A stretch of 64,000 bases of DNA from Heteronotia binoei (GCF_032191835.1 NC_083237.1:29698001-29762000), one strand, 5' to 3'; shown: positions 26,621 to 60,300, counted from the stretch's first letter. A program made the numbers and translations. Notes: a model not told the origin generated them from the sequence alone.

Positions 26621-26659
26621 TTGGTATGGGGCTTTCCTTGTTGCTGTTGGTCCATCTTC

Positions 26660-38025: not shown

Positions 38026-38089
38026 GGTGATGAAAAAGCTGCACCATCTGGATGCAAGTTCTTTGAGGGCTGGCAGACAAACTCTTTCG

Positions 38090-38096
38090 TTATATA
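38090..38096 (-). promoter_or_regulatory. ACP4 TATA box
   Basis: TATATAA on the minus strand about 65 nt upstream of the ATG. Confidence 0.6.
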
Positions 38097-40889: not shown

Positions 40890-43812
40890 CTCTCTCTCGG
40901 CTTGACCTCGCGAACGAAGATTCAAGAAAGGTGCAGCAGTCCACGTCCGCTGCAGGCTCGCTGGTGGCTGACAAGACCAATGCGGGACAGGCAGGTCCGG
41001 CCACAGTGGCTGCAGGGAAAAGTCTGATTTGGGGTTGGTGCTGTAGCAGTACGATTCTTCCTCAATCTCCTTTTTTCCTCAAGACCAGCTATGCGTGCGT
41101 TCTCAAAGGAAGAGACAGCCTGGTGGATGGTGTGCCTCCATGCTTTGCGATCTGAGGCTAGGCCAGACCACTGGTGATGGTTAATGCAACAGGTACCAAG
41201 GGATTTCTTCAAGGAGTCCTTGTACCTCTTCTTTGGTGCCCCTCTATTTCGATGGCCGGTGGAAAGTTCGCCATACAGAGCAATCTTGGGAAGGCGCTGG
41301 TTTTCCATCCTGGAGATATGCCCTGCCCAGCACAGCTGTGCCTTCAACAGCAATGCCTCAATGCGTGTAAGCTCCGCCCACTTGAGGACTTCAGTGTTGG
41401 TCACAAAGTCACTCCAGTGGATGCTGAGGATGGTGCGAAGGCAGCGCTGATGAAAGCGCTCAAGGAGTCGCAGGTGATGACGGTATAAAACCCACAATTC
41501 GGAGCCGTAGATGAGGGTTGTCATCACAACCGCTTTGTAAACATTGATCTTTGTGCTTTTTTTTCAGATGCTTGTTGCTCCACACTCTTTTATGCAGTCG
41601 GCCAAATGCACGGTTTGCCTTTGCCAGTCTATTGTCAATCTCCTTGTCGATCTTGGCGTCTGAGGAGATGATGCACCCCAGGTAGCTGAACTGCTGGACT
41701 GTCTTCAAAACTGATTCACCCACAGTGATGCAAGGAGGGTTATAATCTTCCTGGGGTGCAGGCTGGTGGAGAACTTCTGTCTTCTTCAGACTAACTTCTA
41801 GGCTGAATAGCTTGGCAGCCTCTGCAAAGTAGGACGCCATATGCTGCAGAGCTGATACCGAGTGGGAGACAAGTGCAGCATCATCAGCAAACAGTAGCTC
41901 TCGGATAAGTATTTCCATTGTCTTGGAATGGGCCTTTAGTCTCCTCAGGTTGAACAGGCTGCCATCGGTGCGATAGCAGATGTAGACACCATTGTCATCA
42001 TCTAGATCTACTGCGGCTCTTTGAAGCATCATGCTAAAGAAGATCGTAAAGAGAGTTGGCGTGAGAACACGGCCTTGCTTTACACCTGTGCCTATTGGGA
42101 AGGGCTCCGAGAGATCATTGCAGTGTCTGACTTGGCCTCGCTGGTCTTCATATAGCTGGATGACCATACTGAGGAACTTTGGGGGACATCCTAAACGTTC
42201 CAAGATTTGCCACAGGCCGTTTTTGCTAACGGTATCAAAAGCTTTGGTAAGGTCGACAAAAGTCGCATATAGACCCTTGTTCTGTTCCCTGCATTTCTCT
42301 TGGAGCTGCCTGAGAACAAATACCATGTCGGTGGTGCTCCTGTTAGCTCTGAAGCCACACTGGCTCTCTGGGAGGAGTTCTTCTGCAATGGTGGGCACCA
42401 GTCTGTTCAGGAGTATTCTAGCAAGGATATTGCCTGCGATGGAGAGCAGGGTTATCCCCCGGTAGTTGGAGCAGTCTGACTTTTCCCCTTTGTTCTTATG
42501 TAGAGTAATGATGATTGCATCACGAAAGTCCTGTGGTAGTTTGCCTTGTTCCCAGCAGGTGACAAGTACTTTGTGAAGTGTGCTATGTAGTACTATGCCC
42601 CTATGCTTCCAGATCTCTGGTGGGATTCCATCAACTCCCGCTGCCTTGCCACTTTTCAGTTGCCTGATGGCTTTAACAGTCACTTCTAGGGTGGGAATCT
42701 CATCCAACTCTGTTTTCACTGGTTAAAGTGGGGTGAGGTGGATTGCTGAATCTTGAACTACGCGATTGGCACTGAAGAGAACCTGAAAATACTCCGACCA
42801 CCGGTTCAGTATGGATGCCTTGTCTGTGAGGAGCACTTGGCCATCTGCACTACCAAGGGACTCTGAGCCTGATATGATGGACCATAAACTGCCTTCAGGG
42901 CTTTGTAGAACCCTCTTAAATCACCAGTGTCTGCGCACAGCTGGGTTCTCTCTGCAAGCTTGGTCCACCACTCGTTCTGAATGTCTCGAAGCTTGCGCTA
43001 GAGGCCTGCTTGTGTGGGGAGGGCGGGATACAAATAAATTTTTTTTTAAAAAAAGGTTGCTACATACAGCGCGAAAGGTTGCTTTTTTCTCGGGACAGGA
43101 GGGCTGAGCAAGATGTGCTTGGTAGGCAGGTCTCTTTTTTGCCAGTAATTCTTGGATCTCTTGATTGTTCTCGTCAAACCAGTCCTTGTTCTTCCTTATG
43201 GAGAACCTGAGGACTTCTTCAGAGGTCAACAGGATGGTAGTTTTTAGGTGTTCCCAGAGTGCTTCTGGAGAAGGATCTGTGAGGCAACTGGGGTCCTCAA
43301 TTCTTGTCTGGAGTTTTGCCTGGAAGGCAGCTTTAACTTCGGCTGACTGAAGGCTGCCAACCTGAAACTTCCTCCAGGGGATACCGCCTCTCCTGGGTGT
43401 AGATTTAAAGTGAAGACGGAGATTGCCGCGTATAAGACGATGATCCGTATGACATTCTGCACTGGGCATTACTCGGGTGTGTAAGACATCTCGAAGGTCT
43501 CTCTGGCGCACCAGAGTGTAGTCAATAAGGTGCCTATGCTTGGACCGTGGGTGCATCCAGGTTGTCTTCAAACTGTTCTTCTGCTGGAAGATAGTGATGG
43601 TAATGGTGAGCTGGTGCTCCTTGCAGAATTCTAGCAGGAGGCGCCCGTTATCATTGCAGTTGCCAATGCCGTGTTTGCCAAGTACTCCTTTCCAGGCTTC
43701 TGAGTCTTTACCTACTCTGGCATTGAAGTCACCAGGGATGATCACCTTGTAATGTAGATCAGCATAGAACTTGTTCTTTTCTGCAGGATCTGCTTGAAGA
43801 GTTGGGGCATAC
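40890..43812 (-). mobile_element. RTE-clade LINE, 5'-truncated, frameshifted ORF
   Basis: APE (GDFNARVG, IDY, TDH), RT (FADD) and C2H2 finger over ORFs 42921-43814, 41460-42719 and 40922-41527; (GA)n tail; 19-bp TSD ACATCTAAATGA(T/G)TTCACT at 40871-40889 and 43813-43831. Confidence 0.93.
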
Positions 43813-44479
43813 ACATCTAAATGAGTTCACTAAATGGTACAAAACTTTAGAGCAAAAGTGCAGTCTTAAACAGAGTAGCACAATTTTAAGCCCACTGATC
43901 TAGAAGGGCATAACTCTGCTTTAGAACTGCACTGGCTGTTATGCCAAGCAAGCAAGCTTCTTGAACAGAAGAAATGAATCTTGTAAGTTAGAAATGAATC
44001 TTGAGAGACTGACAGGTCCAAGGTCACACAGCAAGGATTTAAATCTCCTGGGTCCAGCACTTTAACCATTGCAGAAAAACAGCTCAAAGACTAACACATA
44101 GGGTTGTTTGGACTCCCCCAGCTAATCAGCTAGGGATGGGGAGATAGGGTTGCCAGATCCAGATTGGGAAACTCCTGGAGATTTGGGGATGGAGCTTGGA
44201 GACGACAAGGACCTCAGGGAGATACAATACCACAGAGTCCACCCTCAGGGGATCCATTTTCTTCAGACAAACTGATTTTTGTAGCCTGAAGATGAGCTGT
44301 AATTCCAGGGGATCCCCAGGTCCCACCTGGAGGCTGGCATCTCTATGTAACACATAGGTTGGATCCATCCAACTTTTCCACTCGTTAAAAACAAACGAGG
44401 GAGTCCCATTTGGCCACTATGCTGCTAGTCATGGGCCTGCATGAACAAAAAACGTGTGCACTGAAGAGTGTCCTAAAGG

Positions 44480-44487: not shown

Positions 44488-44759
44488 GGACAACACTTAG
44501 CAAAACAGCTGGCTGGATCCAATGCACTGTATGTGGACATACAGAGAAAGAGAGTAAACCCTTCCCTCCTCCCACTTTCTTTGCTGCAAATATTTGCACA
44601 CCAAAGAGCGGCTGCTGTCCCAAAAAGTGAGGCATCCTCTTTGCCTCCCACCTTTCCACTCAGTGCCCTTCTGACTTCTGACCCCACTCAGAGGCACTCT
44701 TTGCCCTGTTGCACCAACTCCAGCGTTCAGACAGTGAAAAGGTGATTTAGAGACAAGCC

Positions 44760-44811
44760 ATGGGAGCATTTGGAGTCTTTGTCGTCACCCTCCTCTTCTT
44801 TGGAGCAGCAG
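44760..44811 (+). CDS. I-domain gene exon 1 (signal peptide)
   Basis: MGAFGVFVVTLLFFGAA, phase-1 donor GTAGGC. Confidence 0.75.
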
Positions 44812-47800
44812 GTAGGCAGTGGCTCCCCCATACTGGGAGTTCCCATGCAAGGGGGGATTGAGAAATTAAAAGGGCAAGCTGGCCAGGAGTAAAGAGAATG
44901 AGGGACACCCATTGTCATTGCTACTGGCCAGGTCTGAGCCAAATGGCCTCACCATTGTTATCAGCAAAGCTGGGGTTTGGGCACAACTTGATTCAGGTCA
45001 CCAACAGCCCTCCAGGGCAGGCAACAGGCCACCCAAAACTTTCCTGGTAAGTTAAAGAGCCAGTCTGTCCCTTACCTTGTACCCCTTTCTCTGGGCTGAG
45101 GCAATATCTTCCTGGCCTTCTTAGTGTCTTGATGTTCTCGGCACATTCTCACCCCTTTTTCCTCTCTCACAGAGTCTGTTGATGGTGATTTTGACCTCTG
45201 GGATGCTTTAGATGTGCCAAAAATCCCACAAAGAAACGAGGGAGGACGTAAGCAAAGGGTTTGGGAAAAGATGGATGGAAAGGTGTCAGGCCAAGTGAAA
45301 AGATTTGGGGTGAAAAGGTGTAATAGTGACAAAAGGCACAGGCTGAAAAAACATATGTTGAAAGAAAAGCAGGAAGACGAAATATGATTTGAAAATGCCA
45401 TCTTGCATAGCTATCAATCATTTCAGAAGCACAGTACATTGTATTCAAAACTACCGCTCTGTCATGTATACCAGGCATGTCCAACTTCGAACAGGTCATG
45501 ATCTATTTTTTCCGGACAAAAGTGCTGGTGATTTACCACCATGAAAATTAAGTTTCAAATTAGTTTTGAATTAGATTCTAATCCACCAAAGTTGGGTTCC
45601 ACCGCCCCCCCCATTTACAATGTACCTTCTGTCATTTAAGCAAAATGGTAAGCAAAATAAGCAAAAACAAAACAGAGACGAAGATCCAGAAAAAACTGCG
45701 AACAGTTTTTCTTAAATTTTTATTGTTATAACTTTCTTTAACTGTCTTAATAACTTTCTTTAACTTTTATTGAGTAATTTGTGTTAAATGTAGGTCAAGT
45801 ATTGATCCAGGCTGATCTTGCGCAATCTTTAAAACTTTGCTCTTGCTAATTAGTTAGACGCCTGAGCCTCCAATTCATCCACCAGCTTTTTGAAGTTGGG
45901 TGAATATTGTGTGAGGGCCAGTCTCAGGGAATCCTGGAGATGTTCATCTGTCATGTTGGAACGCTATGTACTCTTTGTCATTTTCAGATGGGAAAATGCA
46001 GATTCACACAAATAAGTTGAACCGAAACAGGAGTGTACAGCTTCACTGCATCTTCTCAAGTTGGGGAATTTGTCTCTAGGCACTAGCTTCCAAAATGATT
46101 CTTGCTCAGCATGGGAAAAATGTCATTTTTAAGGGTTACTATTTCATTTTCAAGAGATGCCTTGTCCACTGAGTAATTTTTACTGATAGCAGCTGCAGTT
46201 TCCTTAATGTCCATATCTGTTTTGAATGGATATGGCAAGTACTCCACAACTTTTTCAGTTCTCTGGAAGTCACAGAATCTTTTTTTTGAATTTCTGGATA
46301 ACAGCAGATTTCTGTCACATACTTCTGAAAAACAAAATTTGGATATTGTCCCAGATGGTCCTGCGTATTACGAAAATGATCAAAAGTGTTGTTTGCAAGG
46401 TCAGTCAACATTAGCTCAAATTTGCTCGTGTAGGATGAAACTGTACTCATCATCATACCAGTGCATTTGTTTTTAATTGTAGTTCAAAGTTCACTTAGTT
46501 CGCCTGTAAAGTCAGCGAGAAATGCCAGATCACATAACCACTCCTCATCTTCCAACTCTGCTTTGTCATCTCCCCTCTCTTTCAAAAACCGTATTTCATT
46601 CAGCAAATCACGAAATCTTTGCAGAAATTTATGCCTACTTAGCCACCTTACATCTGTGTGCAAAATGATTTCCACTGCCCCTTCATCAAGAGTAAGATTG
46701 AAAAGCCATCTTTGAAGTGATCTTCCACGAACTGAATTTACAATTTTGAAAGTGATGTCCATGACAGTCTTTGTATTGAGTCTCTTGCTTGCCAAAACTT
46801 GCTGTTGAATGATGCAGTGGTAAGAAAAGAAATCTGGAAAGTCGTCATGCTGTCTACAGAGGCCTATGAAACCGTTAACCTCACCTGTCATTGCTCTTGC
46901 TCCATCAGTAGTGATGGAAACAAGTTTATGCAATGGAAGATTACGCTTTGTCACAAAAGAATGGAAAAAGCTGAATATTTCCTGACCGGTAGTTCTCCCT
47001 TTTAATTAAATCATTTCAAGTAGTTCTTTTTTGAAGACTTCAAAAACCATCTGGATAAAGACTAGTAACTGGGCTATGCCTCTTATGTCTGTAGACTCAT
47101 CCAGTTGGAGTGAGAAAGCAACACAAACTGAAACATCCTCCAATAATTGTTCAGTTGTGTCTCCACACATCTTTTCTATTCACAACGCGACGGTGTTTCT
47201 TGACAATTGTACATCTTGAAAAGCAGCTATGAGCTCTTTCTTATTCTTAAATTCTTCAAAAAGATTGTCTGCTGCTTCAAGAAAACAATCTTTTACAAAT
47301 TCTCCTTCATTGAAAGATTTGCATTTCTTTGTGATCAGGTTGCTGACCTTGAAGGATGCCATGGTTGCACTGACCGAATGTGACCTTGGCTTCACCATCA
47401 ACTGTTGCTGTGCAGCCAATTTAGATTTAAGTTCTTTGAGCTTCATTTTACGAATTTAATTTTTGGGTGGAAAATCAGCATCAAACTTATTGCTATGCAG
47501 AGCCTTATAATGACGCTCCAGATTACCTTTTTGGGCAAGGATACAGCGGCATTACAAAGTAGACAACAACACTTGTCTTTAACCATGATGAAAAAGCAGT
47601 CCATTTCCCACTCATCATGAAAGTGGTAGGTTTTGCTCTTCTTTGGAACACTCATCTTCATAATACTGGGGTGCTAAGTTAGCACTGGCTGAATCTGGTC
47701 CAAAACTGTCACTGTCCCAAAGTATTAAGGATCAACAGGAACTGAAGACCTCTGGATGATGCCAAAACCACACATGCGGTTCTAAAAGTAAAAATAAGAA

Positions 47801-50800
47801 TTCATCATACTGGCACCAATAATCAAATACCACCACACCAAACAATCATCAAAAAACCCCAAATACCTGTCCAGCAAACCACGAGACCAAGTGGGGCTGG
47901 TGATCTACCTCTGACCCCTCTGTGATCTACTGATAGATCGCGATCTACCTGTTGGACATACCTGATGTATACAATACCTGATGCTTGCACATTTAAAAAC
48001 ACCCCCCCCCCCAATTTGGGTGTATCAACGGCAAGAGAAAAAACTTTCAGTATGAATTCAGCCTTATGTAGCATATAGACAGATGCTAAACAGAAGTTCA
48101 CAGAAAATTATTTGAACCCTGTTTTAAACATACTGTGGCATATATGAGAAAGTTCAGTGCTGGTGTCATATCTGCCAATTGCCATTGTTAATCAGGAACA
48201 GTCCCTGGTTTGTCCTGTTTTTAGTCTTGGGAGGAGGGGGGATGCCCTTTAGCATGAGTTGCTGATGTTGTCATTCTTTAGGACTGAATCCCCTCTGAGC
48301 CTTGAGAAGTTAAATCTCTGCTTGGGGCAGCAAATGCCTCTTTTCTCCTCTAACATCTATGAGAATGGCCAAAATTAAGCAGAGAAAGCTTTTCCTGACA
48401 TGAAGTAGGGAGATTTGGGGGAGGGGAGGAGCTTTGCCTACTATATTTATTATTTTATTTATTTAATTCCATTCAGTTCGTATCCCACCCTCCCTGCCGA
48501 GGCAGGCTCAGAGCGGCTCACATGGTCATGCATACGCATGAATACAAGCATACATTAAAACAGTAAAAACAATTTAAAACATAGAAATTGACATTTCATT
48601 TCAAGTACTATGATCTTAAGTGTGTTGTCTTGCTATTCCAGCTAGGTGTTCTCCGTAAAGCAGATCTTAATGGTCCAGATGTTCTATATGGAGCAGATTG
48701 CAAGAGGTGGTCCAGATAATTTTTAGAGACTGTAGTAGCCAATGATCTAACTTGCAAATGCCTGGTGGAAGAGTGTAGTCTTACAGGCCCTGCGGAACTG
48801 TACAAGCTCTCACAGGGCCCTGACCTCCTCTTGGAGCTCATTCATCCTGTGTACAGGGGTGTTAAAGGCACAGGTGCCCCACCAGGAACAAAGTTGTCAA
48901 CCCTGGTTCAAATTAAACTCTGATGAACTGCCAGGCTGAGGTTGTTTGCCCATATCTTGGATCCTTTAATTGGATACGCCAGTGCGTACAATGGACCTTG
49001 GGACCTTCAGGATCCAAAGCATGTGCTGAACCACCAAACCAGGGCTCCTCAGTGACCTAAGGAATGCAGCTGAGTCTTAGGAATGGAGGGAAATGGTTTT
49101 GCCTATGAATAATCTGCTCTGCTCTGCTTTACTTCCTTTACTACACCCAGGGTGTCCAAATAATGCCCGAGATATTATCTTCTTAATTGATGGTTCATCC
49201 AGCATGCGATCCTCAGAATTCATGCATATGAAGGAGTTTGTTACACATACCATGAAAAGCTTTCCCAACAATACACAGGTAATACACAGTAGGGGGAGCT
49301 GTACTACAGGTAATGGGGATGGAACAGCCCCCTTGAATTACAGAGAAAGGTGTGGCAAGGAAGACGTCTAAGTGGCAATGAAGGCAAAAATTGACTTATG
49401 GGAACCTACCTTATAGCAAGTAGGAGCCTAGGTTGCCAACTCCCACTGGGAAATTCCTGGAAATTTGGGGGCAGTGAGTGGGAGGGGTGGTGCTTGGGGA
49501 GGGAGCTGAGCAGGGATGTTAGGCCCCATAGCTGACCTACTGAAGCTGCCACTTCCTCCAGGGGAAATGATCTCTGCAGTCCAGAGTCTACAAGTTGCAT
49601 GACTTAAATGCAGGGGTACAAAATTCCAGGCACAAAAAATAAATTAATTTTTTAAAAATCTGTTGTGGTGGCTAATGGGAAGCTGTGGAATTCTGCAAGC
49701 AAAGTTTCAGTCAGAAGAGCTCTCTTCCTTCCCACTAATTTCTCCCCATCCCCTCTAGTTCTCTCTCCTGCAGTTCTCCAGTCGCTTTCAGGAGCACTTT
49801 GACTTCAAGCAGTTCCACAGAAATCCTGATCCAGATCAACTGCTCAACCAGGTTAAGCAATTGGGAGGCTCCACGCACACAGCCTCTGCCATCAGGAAAG
49901 CTGTGTGGGTATCTTTGGTCTGTTTCTTCCTGCTCTGTGGCCAGCATGCCACAGAAATGTTTTTACGACCATTTACTGTCTCTCCTTTGTATTTATAGCA
50001 TTTTAGTATGCTTGTGAGGTGTGGTTCATAACTTCCTAAGTTCTCTTATATTCTTAAGTAACCTACCAAAAGTTCTGGAACCCTGTCCCCAAGCCTAAGT
50101 GCTGTATGAATTGTGAGCATCAGAAATATACATGTGAAATAAGTTATTTTTAAACTCTTAAGGGTTTACCTGCTTACAATGAACACTTTCCAAAAGTAAA
50201 TTATACTTAAATATTCCCTCTTTGAAGAACAATCTTATGCTGTTAAGTTAATCGTAACTAAAGGAGGGTTTTTCTGGGGATCATTTATTCCTCATAAAAG
50301 TGATAGAAATCTTGAAAAATTCACCTTTAGCCAGGGAAATTTTTTGGTGGGCCAGATGGTTGGTATTTAGAGTACCAAATAGTTTGGAGCGACACCAATT
50401 TTTTTAAAAAATAGACATATCCTTAATTTAAAAAATAAATTCTTACCCCCCCCCCCCCCCCCCCCGGAAATCTGATTGAAATCTGATTGGAAATCTGAAA
50501 ACAGCAGCTTTCCTGAAAAATATTTTAGGTGAGTGGTGCACATACCAGACTCATCCTAGCTATGGTTGGAAGGAACTCATTTGCATATTAAGCCACATCC
50601 CCTAATGCCAAGCCAGCCAGAACTGCATTCCTGGGCATTCCTGCTCAAAAAAAGCCCTGTCTATGGTCCTACAATGATTCTTAGTGGTACTGGCACAGGA
50701 CAAGAAAAGAGAAAAAAATAATGTCAACTGACCAGGAGATAAATGTCCTGATACTTTAATGGAGGTTTAATGAATGATAGTGAACAGTTGAAATTTTTAA

Positions 50801-53800
50801 TGTTATGGGGATAAATGACAACCCCTGGTATTTACTGCCAATCAAAAGGGCAGATAGAGGGACAAGTTTAATTTGGTATTGCTAATAGCTTTTGTATCTC
50901 CTCATTCTGCTCTCCTTTCTTCTCTCCAATGTTTAGAAGGGAGCTGTTTGTGCCACACAGAGGTGCCCGCAACACGGCCACCAAGATTCTCGTGGTGGTG
51001 ACCGATGGGCTGAAAACTGGGGACCCCTTAGAATATCTAGAGGTTGTCGAAGAGGCAGAAAGAGCTGGAGTTGCGCGCTTTGCAGTTGGGGTGAGACCTA
51101 AGTATCTGTTCTTTCTTATCTGCTGCCTTTCTTTCTTTCAACATGAGGCAGAAAACTTGGAGTGCAGATTTTGTCTAGAATCCATTATCCTGACAGTGCT
51201 GGATTAAACCCTGTGGAGGCCCCTAGGCAGTCAAAACCTCAGGGGGCCTCTTGCAAATGATTGCAGAGTTGGAGCGCCCATCCTGCCACCTGTAGCCCTC
51301 ACTGCAGCCTACAGGCACCTTCTCCAAAGCCCCTTTGACAAAGCTGTGGGGGAGAGGCAAACTTGGTGGCGATGCTAGCAGTGGCCTCCTCAGTCAAATT
51401 TGGCAAAGAGTGGCTCAGTTGCTGGCTGCATTGTGCAGGCTCTGAGAGTTGCAAGCAGGGAGAAAATCAGGGGGGGAAAGCTGGCCCGGGGCCCCTAAAG
51501 GCATGGGGGCTCATAGGCCAGTGCCCACTTGGCCTAATTGTTAATCTGGCCCTGTATCCTTAGGTCCTAACTTCATTTACAGCTTCTTGTGGGGCAAGAG
51601 ATTCCAAGATGGTGCCAAATGCAGACAGAAGCATGCAGTTGTCCCAGAGCAGTGGTCTTCAATCCTTCCAGACCTGTTATGACTTGAATATGGGATCCAC
51701 TAATCTGTGGTTTAGGGAGGGACTATAGAGTCCATCTTCCATGGCAGCCATTTTCTCTGGGGGAACTGATCTCTGCAACCTGGAGACTGGTTGTAAATTC
51801 CAGGAGATCTCCAACTACCACCTGGAGACTGGCAACCCTAGCTGCTCCAACTTGACTTCCAGCCAGTCTGTTTCCTGTGCTTTGCTTGTGACCCATAAAA
51901 CGCACCAATTACATGAGCCCTGTGTGTTGACACACTTGGGATGGGACTCTGTGCAGCCCACCTTGAATTGTGCCTTCAGAGAGATGCCTAAGCAACTCTG
52001 AACTTTTGTATTGCTTCTTCCAAGTCTACCTCTACCCTTGTAGCTTTTGAAGGCAGTTTGGTGGTGCTTATTAAATGTCTTTTCTCTTGGGAAGGTTGGT
52101 TTGGGCTTCATCAGTGCAACTGCCCAACAGGAGCTCCATGCCATTGCTTCCAGTCCTGCCACACAGCACACGTTCCATGTGAGACACTTCACAGACCTGC
52201 GTGACACCCATCACCAACTGCAAGAGAAGATTTGTTCCAGACGTGGTACGGTGGCTTATGGGGGAGGAGATTGGGAAGAGGGAGATTGTGGGAGATTCTC
52301 TGTCATGGATGTCAGAAATGGCCAGCTTTTTAATGCCTTTATACTTATCCCCCCTCCCCCCCCTGCAAAAAAAAAAAGTTTACAGCAGCATTAATAGCCA
52401 GCAGAGTATTGTGATCTATGCCTGCCTGGTGAAACAACAGAAGTCCTGGGGTGGCAGAGTGAACAGGATTTCCTGTAATTAAGAGGCGGGTTTCTTGTAC
52501 CCTTTTTGGAGATCTCTGTAGCATTCATCACTCTAGTGGCAGTGAATCATATATATTAATTGTACTTGTGTACTTCCTTTTGAGAGACAGCTAGTGTGAA
52601 TGATGCTAGGATTTTGGAGACCCAGTTTTGAATCCCCACTCTGCCGTGGAAGCACAGAGGGTGATCTTGGGTCAGTCATAGACTCTCAGCCTAACCTACC
52701 TCACAGGTTGTTGTGAGAATAAATTGAAGAAGGGGAAAATAACATTGTAAACTGCTTTTTTTTTTCAGTCAAAAATTTCTGTTTTCCAACATACATATTA
52801 CAGAACAAAGCAACACATACTCTATTGCACTAACTGAAACACACAAACAATAAACTAAATAAACAAATAAACAATAAACTGGAGAATAAGGGTTAAAGTC
52901 ATTTACAATATATCGCATCACTTCTATTCCCATCTATTACTTTCTCTTGACCTATTCATTTATTTCTGGTTTCTACAACATTCTTACCTACTACATTTCA
53001 ATTTATTTTTTTTTAAAACCAATCATATAGGGGTTGCCAGGTTTCTTTACACTCTCATATATTTCCTTCCTTCAGCTTCACTGAAAGATAGTCCATTTCT
53101 GCTGTTTCAAATAAGTGCTTTGGGACCCATCTGGAGAGAAAAGTGGTGTATAAATATATAACAACAATTCCTTTTTGTCTCTCCTGAATCTACTGCCAGT
53201 CATTTTAGTTTAGTGACTCTGTGTTCAGATTATGGGAAAGGGAGAAAAGGTTCTCTCTGTCCAGTCCACCATGTCTGCTTTTCCCCACTGCAGCTACCTT
53301 TTTAAAGCCAGATTTGAGTCCAGTAGCACAAGATTTTTTGGAGCATATGCTTTTTAGTCAAATGCCCTTTGTTAGAATCTGATAAAGGAAACTTTGATTC
53401 TTGAAGGCGAAGAACACAAAAATCTTGGTTTCTAGGGTTCTCCTGGACTCACATCGAGCTACCTCCTGCAGACCACCATGGCTACCTTCGGAAACTCTTT
53501 TTTTGTGAACATGTCATGTACCCAGTCCCCCTTAGTTAAGAGCAAAGCTCCAAACGCTTCAGCTTTTCCTCAAAAGAAAGGCAGTTCTTTAACACATTTG
53601 ACATATTTATTGTTTCACTGTTTTCCCCCTTAATTAAATCCACAGAACTATTGACCCTTTACACTTGTTAATCCTGTTTGTCTCTGCATATCTTAAGATA
53701 TCTTCACCATGCTATATGCTAATTTGCTGTTCAGCCTCTGTCTATGTTTGAACGGTTTTCTTCCATTTCATTTTATTTGAAGAAGTGTGTGCGCACCCGA

Positions 53801-54334
53801 AAGCTCATACCTTGAATAAAACTTTGTTGGCCATAACGGTGCCACTGGACTCTAATTTTGTAGGAGAATCTGTGGTCATCCAATGGAAGCAGTTCCGTGC
53901 TGGTTCTTCTGATTTTGCTCATTGCACTCCAGGAGGTTTTAGCAGTGGTTGTGTTCAGGACTGGCCCTGTCGCTAGGCAAACTAGACAACTGCCTTGGAC
54001 GTTGGTCTTCTGGGGGCACCAAACTGGGCACTCCTGTGTCTCAGTGACATTATCAGTGCGGAGAGGGCACCAGAAGTTAGCCTTGCCTAGGGTGCCAGTC
54101 TAGGGCTGGACCTGGTTGCGCTGAAGTTTTTGCTCTGTGCCTTTTCTAGGCCCTGCTGTGCCACAGCCCCCTGTTCCGCCGCAGTTGCCTGACACTTGTG
54201 CTTCACACTCTGATCCGCGAGTGCTGCAGAAACTGGAGCAAGTGTTGAGCAGCCTGGATGCGATGACTGCCAAGCTGGACTTGCTGGCCATCAGGCAGGA
54301 TAAATGTGGGCGCAGTTCCTATTCTTTGTCCTGA
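44760..54334 (+). CDS. Integrin alphaM/X/D-derived, predicted secreted I-domain (VWA) protein with C-terminal coiled coil, about 296 aa
   Basis: Exons 44760-44811, 45173-45247 (tentative), 49151-49278, 49759-49904, 50937-51090, 52095-52245, 54150-54334 = 891 nt in frame, all GT-AG. gccATGG start; MIDAS DGSSS...T...TDG intact; no TM or GFFKR. Confidence 0.78.
45173..45247 (+). CDS. I-domain gene exon 2 (acidic linker)
   Basis: ESVDGDFDLWDALDVPKIPQRNEGG; long pyrimidine tract, donor GTAAGC, phase 1-1. Confidence 0.6.
45472..47964 (-). mobile_element. hAT (Buster/Charlie-type) DNA transposon, full length, frameshifted transposase
   Basis: TIRs CAGGCATGTCCAAC / GTTGGACATACCTG; perfect 8-bp TSD ATGTATAC at 45464-45471 and 47965-47972; transposase pieces at 47443-47661, 47180-47446, 46484-46954 (SITTDGA, HCIIQQ, VRWLS) and 46139-46456. 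Confidence 0.92.
49151..49278 (+). CDS. I-domain exon A (MIDAS DxSxS)
   Basis: CPNNARDIIFLIDGSSSMRSSEFMHMKEFVTHTMKSFPNNTQ. Confidence 0.93.
49759..49904 (+). CDS. I-domain exon B
   Basis: FSLLQFSSRFQEHFDFKQFHRNPDPDQLLNQVKQLGGSTHTASAIRKAV, 146 nt. Confidence 0.93.
50937..51090 (+). CDS. I-domain exon C
   Basis: RELFVPHRGARNTATKILVVVTDGLKTGDPLEYLEVVEEAERAGVARFAVG, 154 nt. Confidence 0.94.
52095..52245 (+). CDS. I-domain exon D
   Basis: VGLGFISATAQQELHAIASSPATQHTFHVRHFTDLRDTHHQLQEKICSRR, 151 nt. Confidence 0.92.
54150..54334 (+). CDS. I-domain gene terminal exon (Pro linker plus coiled coil)
   Basis: GPAVPQPPVPPQLPDTCASHSDPRVLQKLEQVLSSLDAMTAKLDLLAIRQDKCGRSSYSLS*; acceptor ccttttctag; phase matches. 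Confidence 0.72.
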
Positions 54335-54476
54335 GCCAGGCAATATGATCTGCCCCAGGAAATGATTCGTAAGAAGGAAAGCTTCAAGTCGGTCTGGATG
54401 GAAGGAGACACATGGAAGTCCTCCCATGTTGTCTTTGATCTAGTTTTTGACTGAATGCTGATGTAGCCGTGATGCC

Positions 54477-54482
54477 AATAAA
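54477..54482 (+). terminator. Polyadenylation signal of the I-domain gene
   Basis: AATAAA followed by a GU/U-rich element (ctttgtgtgttcttttgttg) about 20-40 nt downstream. Confidence 0.7.
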
Positions 54483-56819
54483 TTCACCTGCTCACAATCT
54501 TTGTGTGTTCTTTTGTTGACAGCAGTAGTAAATCACAGACTTTGTCAGTGCAGCAGTGGGCTACAAAGGGCCTTGTGTGTATATTGTTAACTAATCCCAG
54601 TGCTTTTTTGGTAGAAAAAGCCCAGCCAGAACTCATTTGCATATTAGGCTACACCCCCTGACACCAAGCCAGCTGGAACTGCATTCCTGTGCGTTCCTGC
54701 TCAAAAAAAAAAAAGCCGTGACTAATCCCAAAAGCTAAGCATAATAAAAACAGCAGAGCCAAACTGAGGAAAATGCCACCACTCACAAATTCTTGTGGAA
54801 CGACACCAGCCATTCAAAAAGTGGTTTGGGCTGAACTTAGAAAATCCCACATTACCTAACTGGGGGCGAAGTTGGTTTTCAGTTCCTTGTCTAGAGTTTA
54901 GTTCCTGTTTGAATCATGCTACAAATGTAGTCAGAATTGGGATTTGAACACTGGGGCACCCATAAAGAAACTTTGGTATGGCTGGCTGAAGCCATTTAAC
55001 CACCCCAAGCATATGTATGTACATAGCTGCTTTGTACTGAATCAGACCATTGGTCCATCAAGGTCAAACAGGCAGCAGTGACTACTTGATCTTTTTAACT
55101 AGTGATGCCATGGCTTGAACCCAGGACCTTCTGCAGGCCAAGCTGATGCTCTGTCACTGAACCACGGCCCCCACCCCCTGTGCCACTGTGACTGAAGATT
55201 TTTTTGGCTTCCCCTATTTAATCTATCATGATCCCTTATTCTTGGCTTCTGAAGAAGTTAAAACCATTCTGTTCCAATAAATTGAAGTCTTGGGAAGATT
55301 CTTCTTCTGATGCTGGTCTTTTATTGGCTCTTTGCTAATGCTGCATGGCTACTTTATTACTATAGTACGAGTGACTGATATTTCATTTTATTTGTCTGGG
55401 GCTCATGCATTCATGTCTATATGCCTAATAGTATTTTAAAACTGTAAGCCATATTGAACGCTACTTTAGAAGAGATCAGACTGAGGGGGGAGCAAACACT
55501 CACCATAATGTGTGTGCAGATTTAACTGACCCTAAAGGAACTAGTTTGCTGGTAAGAGGTTATACGGAAGAGACCTCAATTTGTTCAGTATGTATATCAG
55601 AGTTGGTTAAGTATTCTCATCCAGCATTTCAAAAACAATTCAAAACACGCCGCTGCAGCTAATGTAACAGAATATTTTAATGATTTTATTAGTCTTCTCA
55701 GCATTTTTTCCTTAGAAAAAGCCCAGCAGGAACTCATTTGCATACCAGGCCACACCCCCTGACACAAAGCCAGCTGGAACAGCATTCCTATGTGTTCCTG
55801 CTTTTAAAAAGCCCTGAGTCTTGTAACAGCCAGAAAAACTTGACAGCATATTAAAAATATTTTTAAAACCTACATCATTAATATCTTTCCTAATGCTCTG
55901 ACTTCCCTTACCTCTTTTCCTGTTTTTGTTATCAGACACTCCCTTCCTAATGCTCTAAAGCAAAGTGCTAAATGACAGCCAGGACAATCTTAAACAGAGT
56001 TACACCCTTCTAAAGCCATGGACTTTCAGTTTAAGCCAGTGCTGAAAAGGGGGTGAAAGTGCTTTCTAAATTATGAGATAACTTGAAGAGCAGACTTGTG
56101 CAGTGCTACCATGGGACTGGGTCCAACCTGCTTTTTCCACCCAATTTCCCTCCTTATTACAGTCCTCATGCCCCGTGTATCACCAGCAAAGCCTTTTTTG
56201 GGTGATCCTCCCCCTCCCCCCTTTTCTCTAGCTGGTGTTAGAGTTTGGATCTAGTGTTTGGCTCACCGAAAGCCATGTGGATTAGCTCTGTAGAATTTGG
56301 CACTGTGGGCCAACTAGTATGGAAAAGAGGGCATCTGACAAGCTTTACAGGACAGAGGTGGTCCTTCTGTATAAGACACCTTGCAGGGACCTGAAGGCCG
56401 CCTGCATCTGGTAAAAAAACCCCAATTTGTACTTACTCAGTGTTATTCAACCACTATCTTTCAAAACAGGTTCACAAGTGACATGAAGCTTGCTTTACTG
56501 CAAACCAGTGGATACGAAAGCTTACATTCTGAATAAAACTTTGTTGGTCTTAAAGGTGTTACTAGACTCCTACTTTGCAAACCAGTGCTTCCAGTTCTGA
56601 TCATAAGCATTCCCTTTTAAAAACCAAAGCTTTATTTTCAGCCCCGAAACTTGATTTTCAATATCAGCTCAAGCCTCATCATCACTTTGTTTAATTTATA
56701 CCCCGCCCTATCCCATGAGTGGGCTCAGGGCGGCTTACAAACATTAATTAAAAACACTATGTGGCCTCTAAGCATGGGCAGAGTGTGTATCTCAAGCGCT
56801 CAGGAACCACCCCTCCTTT

Positions 56820-57380: not shown

Positions 57381-60300
57381 CAGTTCAAGCTGTTGGATTA
57401 CTTTGGGGTTAAAGGTCAAAAGGGGGGGGAGGAGGAAACTCAGAGGTCCTGGATTCAGATTCAGTCCCGGTTATAATTTCCCCAATTTCTCCCCCCCACT
57501 GCAAGAACCTCAGCAAGTGCAGGAGGTGGGTGCTTCCCCTGGTCCAGACCTCCCCAGAGAACCTAACCCCAATCAGACGATCCAAAACCTGCGGGTCCAG
57601 TTGGCAGCTGCACTAGCTGAGGTAGAAACTGTCCGGGCTGTGGCTGCTGTGAGTGAAAACACCAAGCATGAGGCCGTGGAGGCTGTCCGACGCCAATGCC
57701 AAGAAGAGGTGGCCTCTCTGCAAACTATTCTAAAAGGTGAGAGACCCAGGTGTCAGGCCAGAGGAGGAAGGAATGGGCTGGGCATACTGGTACAGAAGTG
57801 AAGAACCCTGCTGGAGCTGACCAAAAATGCATCTAGTCCAACTTCCTGGCTGACTGGAAGATGCTTAAGCAGGGTTGTGCTGGCCAAAGCCTCCCTCTAA
57901 TGCAGCTTAACACCCCCCCCCCCACACGTACTATTTAGAAAGACACTGATTTTGAAAACGCAGGTTCCATTCAGGCTTTCCAATGTTACCTCTGAGAATT
58001 GGTGTGGGAGGGAGGAGCAGGACCCCAGAGTTGAGCTGGCTTTCCGTGCACGTCAACAACATGAGAGTTCTTTTCCTACAGACACCATCTCTAGTTATGA
58101 GGCGCGTCTTTCGGCTCTAGAGCGCGACAGTCGGGAGAATGTGTGGAGCCGCCTCCTGCCAAGGAGCAGCCCCTTGGACTCCTTGGAGAAACAGATGGAA
58201 AAGGTGACTGAGGACTTCCTTCCGATCCATCGGGGAGGCAGAGAGCCTCTAGGTGGGCCTCTGACGAGTGTGTTTCCTCTCTCCCTGCAGGCACAGGAAG
58301 ACTCCGAGCGGCTCCGGGCCATTGTGCTGCCGATGGAGCAGGAAATCGAGGAACTGAAGGGGAAGCTGGCCAGGGCGGAGGGGCTGGTTCAGGAGCTTCA
58401 GAGTGAGCAGGTGAGCTGGGGAGGAAATGGAAAGAGAATCTCAAATGCCAAAGCTGCTTGGGTGGGCGAGACTGCGATGGGGAAAGGAAGGGGAATCTCT
58501 GCCAAAAGCACTCATGGGAACTGGGTATTCACAAATAAATTGGCATTTCAGTAAGTGTCTTTGAAAATCTAGGACAGGGGTGGCCAAACTGTGGCTTGGG
58601 AGCCACATGTGACTTTTTCACACATATTGTGTGGCTCTCAAAGCCCCCACTGCCCTGTCAGCTGGCTTGGAGAAGGCATTTATCTCTTTAAATCATGTCT
58701 CCAAGCCAGTCAGTCACTTAGAAAAGGCATTTAAAGTTAAAGTAGCTTTCTTTCCACCTCTCCCTCCCCATCTTCCTTCTTGCCTGCTTGCCTGTCTTCT
58801 GGCTCTCAAACATCTGACATTTATTCTATGTGGCTCTTATGTTCAGCCAGTTTGGCCACCCCTGCTCTAGGGCTACATATTTGCGCTGGGATGGTGTAGC
58901 TTCTTCTTTTTCTTTTTTTTAATCTCTAAATCAATAGAAGGTCAATATACAAATTAACAAATAACAGAAATTTGACTGATAGGTGCCAGAACAGTGGCAG
59001 GACAAATTGAAGTTTTAAGCAATGGCTGCTGTTCTGGCAAAATCCTGCTGGATTAATTATCTGTGAAAATTTGTGTTGCCAATTAGAACTTCTCCAGCTC
59101 ATGTAATTTTGGAGATTCCCTTTGGCCCCTGAAATTATAGGGCTGGGGCAACAGGTTTTCCTGCTGGCAGCACACAAATGAATGCTCATCCCATCCAGGC
59201 TGCTTTGGCATTTTTAGAATTTCTGTGAAGGCCTCTTATTAATTTGTAGTTTGTTTGCTATCAGGGCGGCCTCTTTAGCTCCTCTGAATCCCTCCTCACT
59301 GAGCCAGTACTCCCTGACGGACCAAGGAATGACCGTGGCACTTCAGAGGAAGGAGGGGTGGCTGAGAAATTTGCCTCTGGCCTTGACAGTGTCTCCATCG
59401 CCTCATCGTCCTTGCTGGTACCAAGCCCTGGGCCTCCAATCCGGCGCAGACGCTCCCCCAGCCCTGAGACCATATCAATTGCCTCCTCCAGTGGGACCCT
59501 GGTGCCAGAGACCATCTACCTATCACCTGCTGGGTTTCAGCTGGTGCCTGACTCAGAATGGACGCAACTTCACAACAAGGTGTGTGTACGCGTTAAGAAC
59601 AAGAGTGGAACCTGCAAGAGACAAGAAAGCTGTATAGGCTTTGGGGTGAAAACAAGTGTCCTCCCACCCTCTTTGTGGCCTTTCAATTGTAGCACACCTC
59701 TGAAGATCAGAGGAATGGTTTTGCTCTTGGCTGAACCTGGAGATGGAACTGAATGCTGGATTGGCTCTGGCTTGACCGTGACTTTTGGCTTCCTTCTAAA
59801 TGGAAAAGCCCCTGTGAGAGAATTCACAAGCCTGTCTCCTGTAGTGAGGAGGGGGACGGAGAGGAGGGGAAGTGAGGCCTGTCCCAGGAGATGGACTGGA
59901 TGATGTGGGACTAGTGAGAGAAGGAAAGGTGGGCAGAGAGCCCTGGGAGGGACCTGTTTTGCTGGGCATGTGCAGGACAGAACCAAATATTCTGGGCACT
60001 GCAGTTACACTTGGAGGCCACTAATATCATACTGATTCTTGGTGGACTTCCCCATCAGCCAGGTTTCAAAGGCAGCAACATCACCAGCAATTATGTATGT
60101 CATATCCAGTGTTCTCTCTAAACTGAGTTAGTGTGAGCTAGCTCACAGTTTTTTAGCCTCCGGCTCATACATTTTTGTCTTAGCTCAGGAAAAATGACCC
60201 CAGAGCAAACTGATTTATGCAGTAGCTCACAACTTTAATGCCAGTAGCTCACAAAGCAGAGGTTTTGCTCACAAGATCCATAGCTTAGAGGGAGCATTGG

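What the first reader, a model, noticed from the sequence alone, without database searches (positions are those of the whole stretch)
44760..54482. Predicted secreted, oligomeric integrin I-domain protein: a leukocyte integrin alpha stripped of propeller, legs and membrane anchor
Seen: a signal-peptide exon, four I-domain exons (128/146/154/151 nt, phases 1-0-2-0-1) with an intact MIDAS, then a non-integrin terminal exon with a stop, AATAAA and a GU-rich element. The RABEP2 promoter starts about 2.3 kb later, and I found no FG-GAP, thigh/calf, TM or GFFKR exons in between. Known: these exon sizes and motifs match ITGAM/ITGAX/ITGAD exons 6-9 as I recall them; that I domain is the metal-dependent binding site for iC3b, ICAMs and fibrinogen. 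Inference: an exon-shuffled, beta2-independent soluble I-domain multimer. It could be an opsonin or decoy receptor, built like a matrilin (VWA plus coiled coil) but from integrin parts. I know of no described vertebrate protein like this. An automatic pipeline would probably label it a partial 'integrin alpha-X-like' gene.
Basis: partly seen in the sequence, partly recalled or inferred. Interest (0 to 1): 0.9.

Follow-up and report, generated by a model that had tools for sequence, protein, structure and literature searches.

The report
Secreted stand-alone integrin I-domain protein
Lizards and snakes carry an expressed, conserved gene for a small secreted protein made of the ligand-binding I domain of a leukocyte integrin (CD11b/c type) joined to a new self-associating helix; databases mislabel it "integrin alpha-M-like" and the papers I searched do not describe it.

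Summary
A seven-exon gene on the + strand (44760-54334) encodes a 296-aa protein. It has a signal peptide, a short acidic linker, a complete CD11b/c-type integrin I domain on four exons with an intact MIDAS, a proline-rich linker, and a Cys-flanked heptad helix.

RNA contigs from two runs join exons 3 to 7 at the predicted GT..AG sites and carry the end of exon 2. A full-length cDNA contig from another gecko maps to all seven blocks and ends just past AATAAA.

The window is Heteronotia binoei. Its NCBI model (236 aa) is truncated at the N-terminus. Orthologs of about 290 aa with the same seven exons and the same neighbours (His_Phos_2 | this gene | RABEP2) occur in more than 25 squamates, from geckos to snakes. 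No non-squamate protein has the tail.

dN/dS is 0.16-0.29 in geckos and 0.47-0.59 in snakes. All 22 members replace the integrin Glu that couples the I domain to beta2, and all gain a Cys at the end of helix alpha7. The tail models as a parallel in-register bundle (0.71 against a best control of 0.02).

The architecture is shown. Multimer size and function (humoral binder, opsonin or decoy) are inferred.

The parts
44683..44759 (+). 5' UTR (minimum extent)
   Evidence: The cDNA contig L016 of another gecko aligns from 44683 through the ATG.
44760..44811 (+). Exon 1: ATG and signal peptide (MGAFGVFVVTLLFFGAA), 52 nt, ends in phase 1
   Evidence: Sequence and GT donor. It is the only strongly hydrophobic segment. 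It is conserved in orthologs, and the cDNA block ends at 44811.
45173..45247 (+). Exon 2: 75-nt acidic linker with the conserved FDL(S/W)DAL motif
   Evidence: AG/GT sites. The loose end of the RNA contigs before 49151 equals its last 29 nt. cDNA block 45170-45248.
49151..49278 (+). Exon 3: I-domain exon 1 (Cys44, strand beta1, MIDAS D56-G-S58-S-S60; D56 = 49189-49191)
   Evidence: Pfam VWA positions 1-32. RNA joint to exon 4. CD11 paralog exon of 131 nt with the same phases.
49759..49904 (+). Exon 4: I-domain exon 2 (146 nt; MIDAS Thr124)
   Evidence: Pfam VWA positions 40-88. RNA joints on both sides. CD11 paralog exon of 146 nt.
50937..51090 (+). Exon 5: I-domain exon 3 (154 nt; MIDAS Asp157 in VVVTDG)
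   Evidence: Pfam VWA positions 91-138. RNA joints in contigs and in raw reads of run X5.
52095..52245 (+). Exon 6: I-domain exon 4 (151 nt; helix alpha7 ending KIC232-S-R-R-G, in place of the integrin KIFAIEG)
   Evidence: Pfam VWA positions 137-171. RNA joint 52245>54150 in both contig runs. Signature residues.
54150..54334 (+). Exon 7, coding part: Pro-rich linker, Cys252, heptad helix about 259-284, Cys288, stop TGA at 54332-54334
   Evidence: Translation. Single copy in the genome. Conserved in 20 orthologs. dN/dS 0.10-0.30. Parallel homo-oligomer model.
54335..54492 (+). 3' UTR with AATAAA at 54477-54482, followed by a GT-rich run
   Evidence: RNA contigs run to 54472 and 54488. The cDNA L016 alignment ends at 54492. 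Sequence.

Best explanation
This is a functional, squamate-wide gene for a secreted protein of about 31 kDa. I call it a soluble alphaI-domain protein.

Origin. It arose before the squamate radiation, when the four I-domain exons of a CD11b/c/d-type integrin alpha gene were copied as genomic DNA. They were placed between a new signal-peptide exon plus a small linker exon and a new terminal exon.

Mature protein. It has an acidic N-terminal stretch, one integrin alphaI (VWA) domain with a metal-ion-dependent adhesion site, a proline-rich spacer and a helix of about 3.5 heptads flanked by cysteines.

Likely mode of action (inferred). The helix assembles chains into a parallel bundle that is probably disulfide-stabilised, possibly a tetramer. 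Several I domains are then presented together, and each binds an acidic residue of a ligand through Mg2+ at the MIDAS. Avidity comes from multivalency, as in matrilins or collectins.

Independence from beta2. The protein has no propeller, legs or membrane anchor. It has also lost the invariant Glu of the IEGT motif that plugs into the beta-subunit MIDAS. It therefore cannot pair with beta2 or be regulated from inside a cell.

Possible clamp (inferred). A family-specific Cys at the end of alpha7 could pair with the Cys before beta1, clamping the domain ends as in VWF A domains.

Likely role (inferred). By descent from alphaM/alphaX, the most likely role is a humoral binder of CR3/CR4-type ligands (iC3b, fibrinogen, microbial or damaged surfaces), acting as an opsonin, bridge or decoy.
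For: Gene and transcript:
- Splice sites and reading frame are intact.
- RNA joints link E3-E4-E5-E6-E7, and the E2 end is attached to E3.
- A full-length cDNA of another gecko is colinear with all seven exons.

Protein:
- VWA is the only Pfam domain.
- There is one N-terminal hydrophobic segment and no transmembrane segment.
- PDB ranking is alphaM 187 bits, alphaX 169, alphaL and alphaE about 100, alpha1 and alpha2 about 50.

Origin:
- The same-genome CD11 genes lie 7.7 Mb away on the same chromosome at 43-62% exon identity.
- Their I-domain exons are 131/146/151/151 nt with identical phases, and they continue into an FG-GAP exon.
- The family is one clade (100/100 support) inside the amniote CD11 sequences, on a long stem.

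Conservation:
- More than 25 squamate orthologs of about 290 aa were found.
- The seven-exon structure is identical in 8 species.
- Synteny His_Phos_2 | gene | RABEP2 | TUFM holds.
- dN/dS is 0.16-0.29 in geckos. In snakes it is 0.47-0.59 overall, with the tail at 0.13-0.24.
- MIDAS residues are kept in 19-22 of 22 members.

Loss of beta coupling:
- E320 is replaced by H, R or Q in 22 of 22 members, and F317 by C in 22 of 22. Gecko and bird integrins keep KIFAIEG.
- The role of that Glu is described in PMC5054827 and bioRxiv 10.1101/2023.11.05.565221.

Oligomer:
- The best heptad register places seven hydrophobic residues in core positions.
- The tail Cys residues are conserved in 21 of 22 members.
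- A four-copy model scored 0.71 against a best control of 0.02. Partner pLDDT was at least 76 and the runs agreed on at least 94% of contacts. Contacts are in register, e.g. 24-24, 28-28, 31-31, 35-35, 38-38, 42-42, 45-45.
- In the tool's calibration that mark was reached by 21 of 30 solved homomers and 0 of 23 single chains, but the calibration used two copies, not four.
Against: - No protein-level data exist. Secretion, metal binding, disulfides, oligomer size and ligands are all inferred.
- The tissue of expression is unknown. One same-species transcriptome (X6) showed no exon reads, and another (X5) showed only low depth.
- The monomer AF2 model is confident only for the VWA core (pLDDT about 80). 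The tail and N-terminus are below 60.
- The complex test was run with four copies, outside its two-copy calibration, so it does not fix stoichiometry.
- Two lineages have MIDAS substitutions: Hemicordylus (D56H and D157A) and Crotalus (D157G). Metal-dependent binding may therefore not be universal.
- Snake I domains evolve fast, with dN/dS of 0.40-0.56.
- The Cys44-Cys232 clamp could not be checked, because no coordinates were available.
- Absence outside squamates rests on protein databases, not on genome searches of tuatara, turtles, birds or crocodilians.
Confidence: 0.8

Rival explanations
1. The molecule is the same, but its role is structural. It would be a matrilin-like extracellular-matrix adaptor that cross-links collagens and proteoglycans, not an immune or humoral binder.
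For: Language-model features place the full-length protein nearest the short matrilin-3a and cartilage matrix protein clusters (VWA plus coiled coil, 0.95 and 0.94). Structure neighbours include matrilins. The design, VWA then a Cys-flanked coiled coil, is the matrilin design.
Against: By sequence the I domain is CD11b/c-type, not matrilin or collagen VI type: 187 bits to alphaM against about 64 to a collagen VI alpha2 chain. The tree agrees. The tail does not match Pfam Matrilin_ccoil even at E<=10 in any of 20 members. There are no EGF domains. The fast evolution in snakes looks more like an immune gene than a matrix gene.
Confidence: 0.2
2. It is a transcribed relic: a partial integrin duplicate without function, or a non-coding or NMD-targeted transcript.
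For: It derives from a partial copy of an integrin gene. The NCBI models are inconsistent: truncated in Heteronotia, Tiliqua and Python, and chimeric with RABEP2 in Protobothrops.
Against: The open frame, exon structure and synteny are kept from geckos to snakes. dN/dS is 0.16-0.59, and the novel tail is itself constrained at 0.10-0.30. MIDAS and four Cys residues are conserved. The stop codon lies in the last exon, so NMD is not expected.
Confidence: 0.03
3. The exons belong to a larger transcription unit, for example read-through or fusion with RABEP2 or an unseen upstream integrin-like 5' part. On that reading the 296-aa product is not the main product.
For: The Protobothrops model P0018 joins family exons E2-E5 to RABEP2 exons. 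RABEP2 lies on the same strand about 3 kb downstream.
Against: RNA contigs in two runs join E6 to E7 and carry the stop codon and 3' UTR. An independent gecko cDNA starts 77 nt upstream of the ATG and ends after AATAAA. Sixteen or more independent full-length models agree. No propeller-like sequence was found anywhere in the 64 kb.
Confidence: 0.03
4. It is secreted, but the tail is not a multimerisation module. On this reading it is a flexible tail or a binding site for another protein, and the protein acts as a monomer or a simple disulfide dimer.
For: The helix is short, about 26 residues. As a monomer it has pLDDT of only 52-60. One Cys at each end fits a dimer as well as a tetramer. Structure predictors readily bundle amphipathic helices (caveats).
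Against: The heptad pattern is conserved across 20 species, with invariant L, L and D positions. The homo-oligomer score is 0.71 against 0.02 for controls, with in-register parallel contacts that reach both Cys residues.
Confidence: 0.12

Closest known systems
Integrin alphaM/alphaX/alphaD (CD11b/c/d) I domain, the ligand-binding domain of complement receptors 3 and 4
   Same: The ~190-residue domain is homologous: about 55% identity to the alphaM I-domain chain 6rhv_C, from the Cys before beta1 to the end of alpha7. It has the same MIDAS motif (DxSxS, T, D). Its four exons have the same sizes and phases as the CD11 genes of the same genome.
   Different: There is no beta-propeller, thigh, calf, transmembrane segment or GFFKR. 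The protein has its own signal peptide. The invariant Glu of the I/LEGT motif that ligates the beta2 MIDAS is replaced by His, Arg or Gln in all 22 members, and Phe317 is replaced by Cys. The protein ends in a coiled-coil tail.
Matrilins, especially short matrilin-3 isoforms and matrilin-1 (cartilage matrix protein)
   Same: The design principle is shared: a secreted VWA domain followed by a short C-terminal coiled coil with flanking Cys residues that makes disulfide-linked multimers. These are the nearest clusters by language-model features.
   Different: The VWA domain belongs to the integrin CD11 clade, not the matrilin clade. There are no EGF domains. The tail does not match Pfam Matrilin_ccoil and has no detectable homolog outside squamates among 1.84 billion representative proteins. 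The resemblance is analogous, not homologous.
VWF A1 and A3 domains and collagen VI VWA domains
   Same: They share the VWA fold. The Cys spacing before beta1 and after the last helix suggests a disulfide that ties the N- and C-termini together. That comparison is recalled from memory and was not tested here.
   Different: Sequence similarity is far weaker than to CD11 integrins. Those domains sit inside very large multidomain proteins.
Collectins and ficolins (humoral multivalent pattern-recognition molecules)
   Same: The proposed logic is shared: low-affinity, metal-dependent binding heads are multimerised by a coiled-coil neck to gain avidity in body fluids. This is inference only.
   Different: The head domain is unrelated (C-type lectin or fibrinogen-like, against VWA). 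This protein has no collagen stalk.

Membership tests
Integrin alpha subunit | Seven-bladed FG-GAP beta-propeller flanking the I domain | tested here: not met
   Pfam finds only VWA-type domains in five full-length members. tblastn with integrin fragments that carry propeller sequence finds nothing else in the 64-kb window. The same-genome CD11 genes do continue into an FG-GAP exon.
Integrin alpha subunit | Thigh and calf legs, transmembrane helix and GFFKR cytoplasmic motif | tested here: not met
   The protein is 296 aa and ends 60 residues after the I domain. There is no hydrophobic segment beyond the signal peptide: the highest KD-19 value outside the N-terminus is 1.47, in a VWA core strand. 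The transcript ends after exon 7.
Integrin alpha subunit | Invariant Glu in the I/LEGT motif after alpha7, the intrinsic ligand for the beta-subunit MIDAS | tested here: not met
   The position is H, R or Q in 22 of 22 family members and E in the gecko CD11A, gecko CD11B and Corvus integrins. The role of this residue is taken from PMC5054827 and bioRxiv 10.1101/2023.11.05.565221.
Integrin alphaI domain, CD11b/c/d clade (VWA superfamily) | VWA fold with significant best similarity to alphaM/alphaX I domains | tested here: met
   Pfam VWA E = 1e-31 to 1e-41. PDB phmmer gives alphaM 3e-54 and alphaX 1e-48, against alphaL 6e-28. The AF2 core shows alternating beta/alpha elements at pLDDT about 80. 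The family nests among amniote CD11 sequences.
Integrin alphaI domain, CD11b/c/d clade (VWA superfamily) | MIDAS residues D-x-S-x-S, Thr and Asp | tested here: met
   In the window these are D56, S58, S60, T124 and D157. Across 22 members: D 21, S 22, S 21 plus T 1, T or S 22, D 19. Metal binding itself is not testable here.
Integrin alphaI domain, CD11b/c/d clade (VWA superfamily) | Shared exon structure with CD11 genes | tested here: met
   The window has 128/146/154/151 nt, and gecko CD11A has 131/146/151/151 nt with the same phases 1-0-2-0-1.
Matrilin | Matrilin-type C-terminal coiled coil (Pfam PF10393) | tested here: not met
   No PF10393 hit at E<=10 in any of the 20 tails or in the full-length proteins.
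Matrilin | EGF-like repeats between VWA and coiled coil (absent only in some isoforms) | tested here: not met
   No EGF domain was found by Pfam.
Matrilin | Formation of disulfide-linked trimers or tetramers through the coiled coil | tested here: inconclusive
   The four-copy model passes (0.71 against 0.02) with parallel in-register contacts, and the flanking Cys residues are conserved. Stoichiometry and disulfides need experiment.

The most novel reading that the evidence does not exclude
Squamates have a humoral version of complement receptor 3/4: a beta2-independent, constitutively multivalent alphaM/alphaX-type I-domain protein in body fluids. It would bind iC3b/C3d, fibrinogen or microbial and damaged surfaces through its MIDAS, acting as an opsonin, bridging molecule or complement and adhesion decoy. 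This would be a class of soluble pattern-recognition molecule built from an integrin part, unknown in other vertebrates. The new Cys44-Cys232 pair would set its affinity state in place of inside-out signalling.
Probability: 0.3. Interest if true: 0.85.

Novelty: new variant of a known kind. Interest (0 to 1): 0.72.

Why it matters
As far as I know, and in the papers I searched, the integrin alphaI domain occurs in vertebrates only as an insert in integrin alpha chains. There its affinity is controlled through the beta subunit. This gene shows that evolution once cut the domain out, gave it a signal peptide and a new multimerising helix, and removed the residue that couples it to beta2. The result has been kept under selection since before geckos and snakes diverged.

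It matters in three ways:
- It is a natural experiment on what a free, multivalent CD11b/c-type I domain does. That bears on integrin allostery, for example how the open or closed state is set without a beta subunit.
- It is a candidate lineage-specific humoral immune or haemostatic factor in reptiles.
- It is a clear example of gene birth by exon shuffling plus a de novo or unrecognisable terminal exon.

In practice, more than 25 database entries named 'integrin alpha-M/X/D-like' are misnamed. Several are truncated or chimeric, including the model for this genome.

Tried and rejected
- Tail homologs. An exhaustive HMMER search with the 60-aa tail found only three snake proteins of the same family among 1.84 billion representatives. 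Pfam on 20 tails at E<=10 gave only scattered noise and no matrilin coiled coil. The atlas feature search of the tail gave only sub-threshold hits of 0.79 or less. The origin of exon 7 stays unknown.
- Tail copies in the genome. The own-genome search found a single copy.
- Remnants of propeller exons in the window. None were found.
- Outgroup for the tree. I tried to assemble collagen-receptor I domains from the loci on C1 and C4 as an outgroup. Only one exon of each was reliable, so they were left out. The tree was rooted on a partial fish sequence, and the exact CD11 donor stayed unresolved.
- Literature. Searches for the automatic names plus snake or lizard, for each name alone, for soluble I domain plus squamates, and for the SRA run id found nothing on this protein.
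- Earlier scan notes. None cover this place or the word 'integrin'.
- Monomer model. AF2 with a 16-sequence alignment gave only a moderate model (mean pLDDT 56.5). It was used only for secondary structure. No coordinates were available, so the Cys44-Cys232 distance could not be measured.
- Spliced protein as a query. I did not hand the spliced 296-aa protein to the database tools, because it has no reference. Exon references and ortholog ids were used instead.
- Expression level and tissue. Neither could be derived from the coded runs.

Full report
**1. What is in the sequence**

The + strand between 44760 and 54334 carries seven exons with canonical AG/GT borders.

| Exon | Coordinates | Length (nt) |
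|---|---|---|
| E1 | 44760-44811 | 52 |
| E2 | 45173-45247 | 75 |
| E3 | 49151-49278 | 128 |
| E4 | 49759-49904 | 146 |
| E5 | 50937-51090 | 154 |
| E6 | 52095-52245 | 151 |
| E7 | 54150-54334 | 185, stop included |

Spliced together they give an 891-nt reading frame and a 296-aa protein. E3-E6 tile the Pfam VWA profile from position 1 to 174 in order, each exon significant on its own. The window has no N. AATAAA lies at 54477-54482 and is followed by a GT-rich run.

**2. The gene is transcribed and spliced as predicted**

Logan contigs of two RNA runs from the same species label (X1, X2) were laid on 49000-54700. They show joints 49278>49759, 49904>50937, 51090>52095 and 52245>54150. All are GT..AG, at k-mer depths of 500-790.

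Raw reads of a third run (X5) support two of these joints. A fourth run (X6) has no exon reads, so expression differs between samples. The contig part that hangs off before 49151 is identical to the last 29 nt of E2. The contigs run through the stop codon to 54472 and 54488.

Independently, a 1162-nt transcript contig from another gecko (L016, run SRR6291277) encodes a 298-aa ortholog that is 82% identical. It aligns to the window in exactly seven blocks: 44683-44811, 45170-45248, 49151-49278, 49757-49904, 50937-51092, 52094-52246 and 54149-54492. It ends just past its own AATAAA.

So all six junctions, the start and the end are supported. There is no splicing from E6 to integrin-like exons and no assembly gap.

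**3. The protein**

- Residues 1-17 are the only strongly hydrophobic stretch. The next highest 19-residue window is a VWA core strand at 1.47, so there is a signal peptide and no membrane anchor.
- After the signal peptide comes an acidic stretch with a conserved F-D-L-S/W-D-A-L motif.
- The I domain runs from Cys44 to Gly236.
- The tail reads PAVPQPPVPPQLPDTC252ASHSDP, then a heptad helix, then KC288G.
- Pfam finds nothing but VWA-type domains in five full-length members.
- Against solved structures, the domain (queried as the Paroedura ortholog P0022) scores 187 bits with integrin alphaM, 169 with alphaX, about 100 with alphaL and alphaE, and about 50 with alpha1 and alpha2. The alignment runs from the Cys before strand beta1 to the end of helix alpha7.
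- AlphaFold2 on the Paroedura ortholog gives a VWA core at pLDDT about 80 and a 28-residue C-terminal helix at low confidence.

**4. It is a family, and it is squamate-wide**

The tail alone, searched with HMMER against 1.84 billion representative proteins, hits only three proteins. All three are snake proteins, and in each the hit lies at the C-terminus.

Full-length searches then recover orthologs of about 290 aa:

| Group | Genera |
|---|---|
| Geckos | Heteronotia, Paroedura, Eublepharis, Sphaerodactylus |
| Skinks | Lerista, Tiliqua |
| Cordylid | Hemicordylus |
| Lacertid | Zootoca |
| Amphisbaenian | Rhineura |
| Anguimorphs | Elgaria, Varanus |
| Iguanians | Pogona, Phrynocephalus, Sceloporus, Phrynosoma, Anolis |
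| Snakes | Python, Candoia, Crotalus, Vipera, Protobothrops, Naja, Thamnophis, Ahaetulla, Erythrolamprus |

Non-squamate hits (Corvus, Gopherus, Gulo, Arapaima) cover only the I domain. They look like fragments of true integrins; the Corvus and Gopherus sequences carry propeller sequence ahead of the I domain.

The Heteronotia binoei entry (236 aa) is 100% identical to residues 61-296 of my model. Its contig length equals that of the window's contig. The window is therefore H. binoei, and the public model is truncated: it starts at a Met inside the MIDAS motif.

**5. Conservation and selection**

I extracted exact coding sequences from eight species. All have the same seven exons: 52-61 / 75-84 / 128 / 146 / 151-154 / 145-172 / 161-212 nt.

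The neighbours are the same in Paroedura, Sphaerodactylus, Thamnophis and Rhineura. A His_Phos_2 gene lies head-to-head upstream and RABEP2 lies downstream on the same strand, followed by TUFM in Paroedura. In the window, the His_Phos_2 gene lies at about 26.6-38.2 kb on the minus strand.

Pairwise Nei-Gojobori dN/dS:

| Comparison | Whole gene | I domain | Tail |
|---|---|---|---|
| Among geckos | 0.16-0.29 | 0.16-0.24 | 0.10-0.30 |
| Among snakes | 0.47-0.59 | 0.40-0.56 | 0.13-0.24 |

The N-terminal linker is weakly constrained apart from its motif.

An open frame, fixed exon structure and fixed synteny from geckos to snakes exclude a decaying duplicate. From general knowledge, that split dates to roughly 200 million years ago.

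**6. Origin**

The genome has two CD11-type integrin genes, 7.7 Mb away on the same chromosome. Their I-domain exons are 43-62% identical to E3-E6. In CD11A they measure 131/146/151/151 nt, with the same phases 1-0-2-0-1. In both genes the fourth exon ends at ..KIFAIEG and is followed by an FG-GAP exon.

So E3-E6 are a genomic copy of the I-domain exon block, not a retrocopy. E7 is spliced at exactly the border where an integrin would continue into the propeller.

In a maximum-likelihood tree the 21 soluble proteins form one clade (100/100) on a long stem, nested among amniote CD11 sequences. Which CD11 gene was the donor is not resolved. Inside the clade, geckos, lacertoids, iguanians, anguimorphs and snakes group roughly as the species do.

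E1, E2 and E7 have no detectable source.

**7. Derived features that say how it works**

The MIDAS is kept. Across 22 members the counts are D56 21, S58 22, S60 21 plus one Thr, T/S124 22, and D157 19. The exceptions are Hemicordylus (D56H, D157A) and two Crotalus species (D157G).

Three changes separate every family member from the integrins compared. Positions use my mapping to human alphaM numbering.

| Integrin residue | State in the family |
|---|---|
| Glu of the I/LEGT motif (E320) | His, Arg or Gln in 22 of 22 |
| Ile before it (I319) | Polar in 21 of 22 |
| Phe after the conserved Ile (F317) | Cys in 22 of 22 |

The gecko CD11 genes and the Corvus integrin keep KIFAIEG.

That Glu is the invariant intrinsic ligand that inserts into the beta-subunit MIDAS to relay activation (PMC5054827; bioRxiv 10.1101/2023.11.05.565221). 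Its loss fits a domain that no longer has a beta partner.

The new Cys232 and the retained Cys44 sit at the two ends of the domain. These ends are close together in VWA folds. A clamp like that of VWF A1 and A3 is plausible, but this rests on memory and was not measured.

**8. Oligomerisation**

The tail helix has its hydrophobic residues spaced 3-4-3-4: V259, L263, V266, L270, M273, L277, L280. Leu dominates one core position and Val, Met or Ile the other, and several flanking positions are also hydrophobic. Cys252 and Cys288 are each present in 21 of 22 members. Snakes have an extra Cys, giving CxxC.

A four-copy model of tail residues 14-56 scored 0.71 in three runs, against 0.02 for the best of three controls. 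Partner pLDDT was at least 76, and the runs shared at least 94% of contacts. The contacts are in register (24-24, 28-28, 31-31, 35-35, 38-38, 42-42, 45-45), so the chains are parallel. Both Cys residues lie at the interface.

In the tool's calibration this mark was reached by 21 of 30 solved homomers and 0 of 23 single chains. That calibration used two copies, and the score is the model's own confidence. I take this as support for self-association, not as proof and not as a stoichiometry. From the heptad composition and the single Cys at each end, I suggest an even number of chains.

**9. Comparison with known families**

It is not an integrin alpha subunit. The propeller, legs, membrane anchor and beta-coupling Glu were all tested and are all absent. 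Its domain is a member of the CD11b/c/d I-domain clade.

It works like a matrilin or a collectin: binding heads multimerised by a Cys-flanked coiled coil. Language-model features place it next to short matrilin-3 and matrilin-1 clusters. But the VWA domain is of integrin type, there are no EGF repeats, and the tail is not a Matrilin_ccoil.

Seven full-text searches found no paper that describes it. The recent study of I-domain evolution mentions neither reptiles nor matrilins in the terms I searched, and nothing in the passages returned describes a free-standing I domain.

**10. Verdict**

Shown:
- the gene model and its transcription
- the domain identity and the exon-block origin
- family range, synteny and purifying selection
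- loss of the beta-coupling residue

Inferred:
- secretion
- a disulfide-linked parallel multimer
- MIDAS-dependent multivalent binding
- a humoral immune or haemostatic role

I rate it as a new variant of a known kind: VWA plus coiled-coil multimers, here built from an integrin part. Interest is high but not extreme, because function is unknown and the gene is lineage-restricted.

Noticed in passing
window 49189-54334; protein P0030: The public Heteronotia binoei model ('integrin alpha-M-like', 236 aa) starts at Met61, inside the MIDAS motif DGSSSM. It lacks the signal peptide, exon 2 and the start of exon 3. RNA and a related cDNA support the 296-aa form.
   Followed up: yes
protein P0018 (Protobothrops mucrosquamatus); window 57400-61700: This database model, named 'rab GTPase-binding effector protein 2-like', is a chimera. 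It joins this family's exons 2-5 to RABEP2 exons. It is either an annotation error or evidence of read-through transcription into RABEP2.
   Followed up: partly
window about 26600-38200, minus strand: A histidine acid phosphatase gene (Pfam His_Phos_2, about 397 aa in the orthologous models) lies head-to-head with the I-domain gene. It is colinear with the Paroedura locus L017. Its exact identity was not determined.
   Followed up: partly
window 50530-50650 and 54590-54700: Two copies of a short interspersed repeat show very high RNA depth, up to about 27,000. They also show many 'goes back' or 'skips 4030' joints between the copies. These are repeat cross-mapping, not splicing.
   Followed up: no
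window 16544-19525(-), 20199-21287(-), 22437-23660(-), 41460-43814(-): Long ORFs encode LINE-type reverse transcriptase and endonuclease. One is a 993-aa intact-looking ORF2. One insertion sits in the 6.5-kb interval between the phosphatase gene and the I-domain gene.
   Followed up: no
orthologs P0020 (Hemicordylus), P0002 and P0004 (Crotalus): MIDAS residues are substituted in Hemicordylus (D56H and D157A) and in two Crotalus species (D157G), while Vipera keeps Asp. This may mean lineage-specific loss of metal-dependent binding with the scaffold retained.
   Followed up: partly
window 45190-45215 (exon 2); residues about 23-30: An acidic motif, F-D-L-S/W-D-A-L, lies between the signal peptide and the I domain. 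It is nearly invariant across squamates although the rest of the linker evolves freely. It might be a pseudo-ligand for the MIDAS or a processing or sorting signal. This was not tested.
   Followed up: no
loci L017 (Paroedura) and L019 (Sphaerodactylus), exon 6; window 52246-52266: The models of these two geckos use a donor 21 nt further downstream, adding seven residues (GTVAHGG or similar). In Heteronotia the RNA uses 52245, and the +21 position has no GT.
   Followed up: partly
window 45238, 45242, 49197, 51048, 52153, 52172: RNA contigs of X1 and X2 differ from the reference and from each other at these exon positions. Three changes are synonymous and three are replacements (E40K, G41E, S205N). 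This is allelic or lineage variation within the species complex.
   Followed up: partly
snake orthologs, CDS from L020-L022: In snakes the I domain evolves much faster (dN/dS 0.40-0.56) than in geckos (0.16-0.24), while the tail stays constrained (0.13-0.24). Snakes also shortened alpha7 by two residues and gained a CxxC before the helix.
   Followed up: partly
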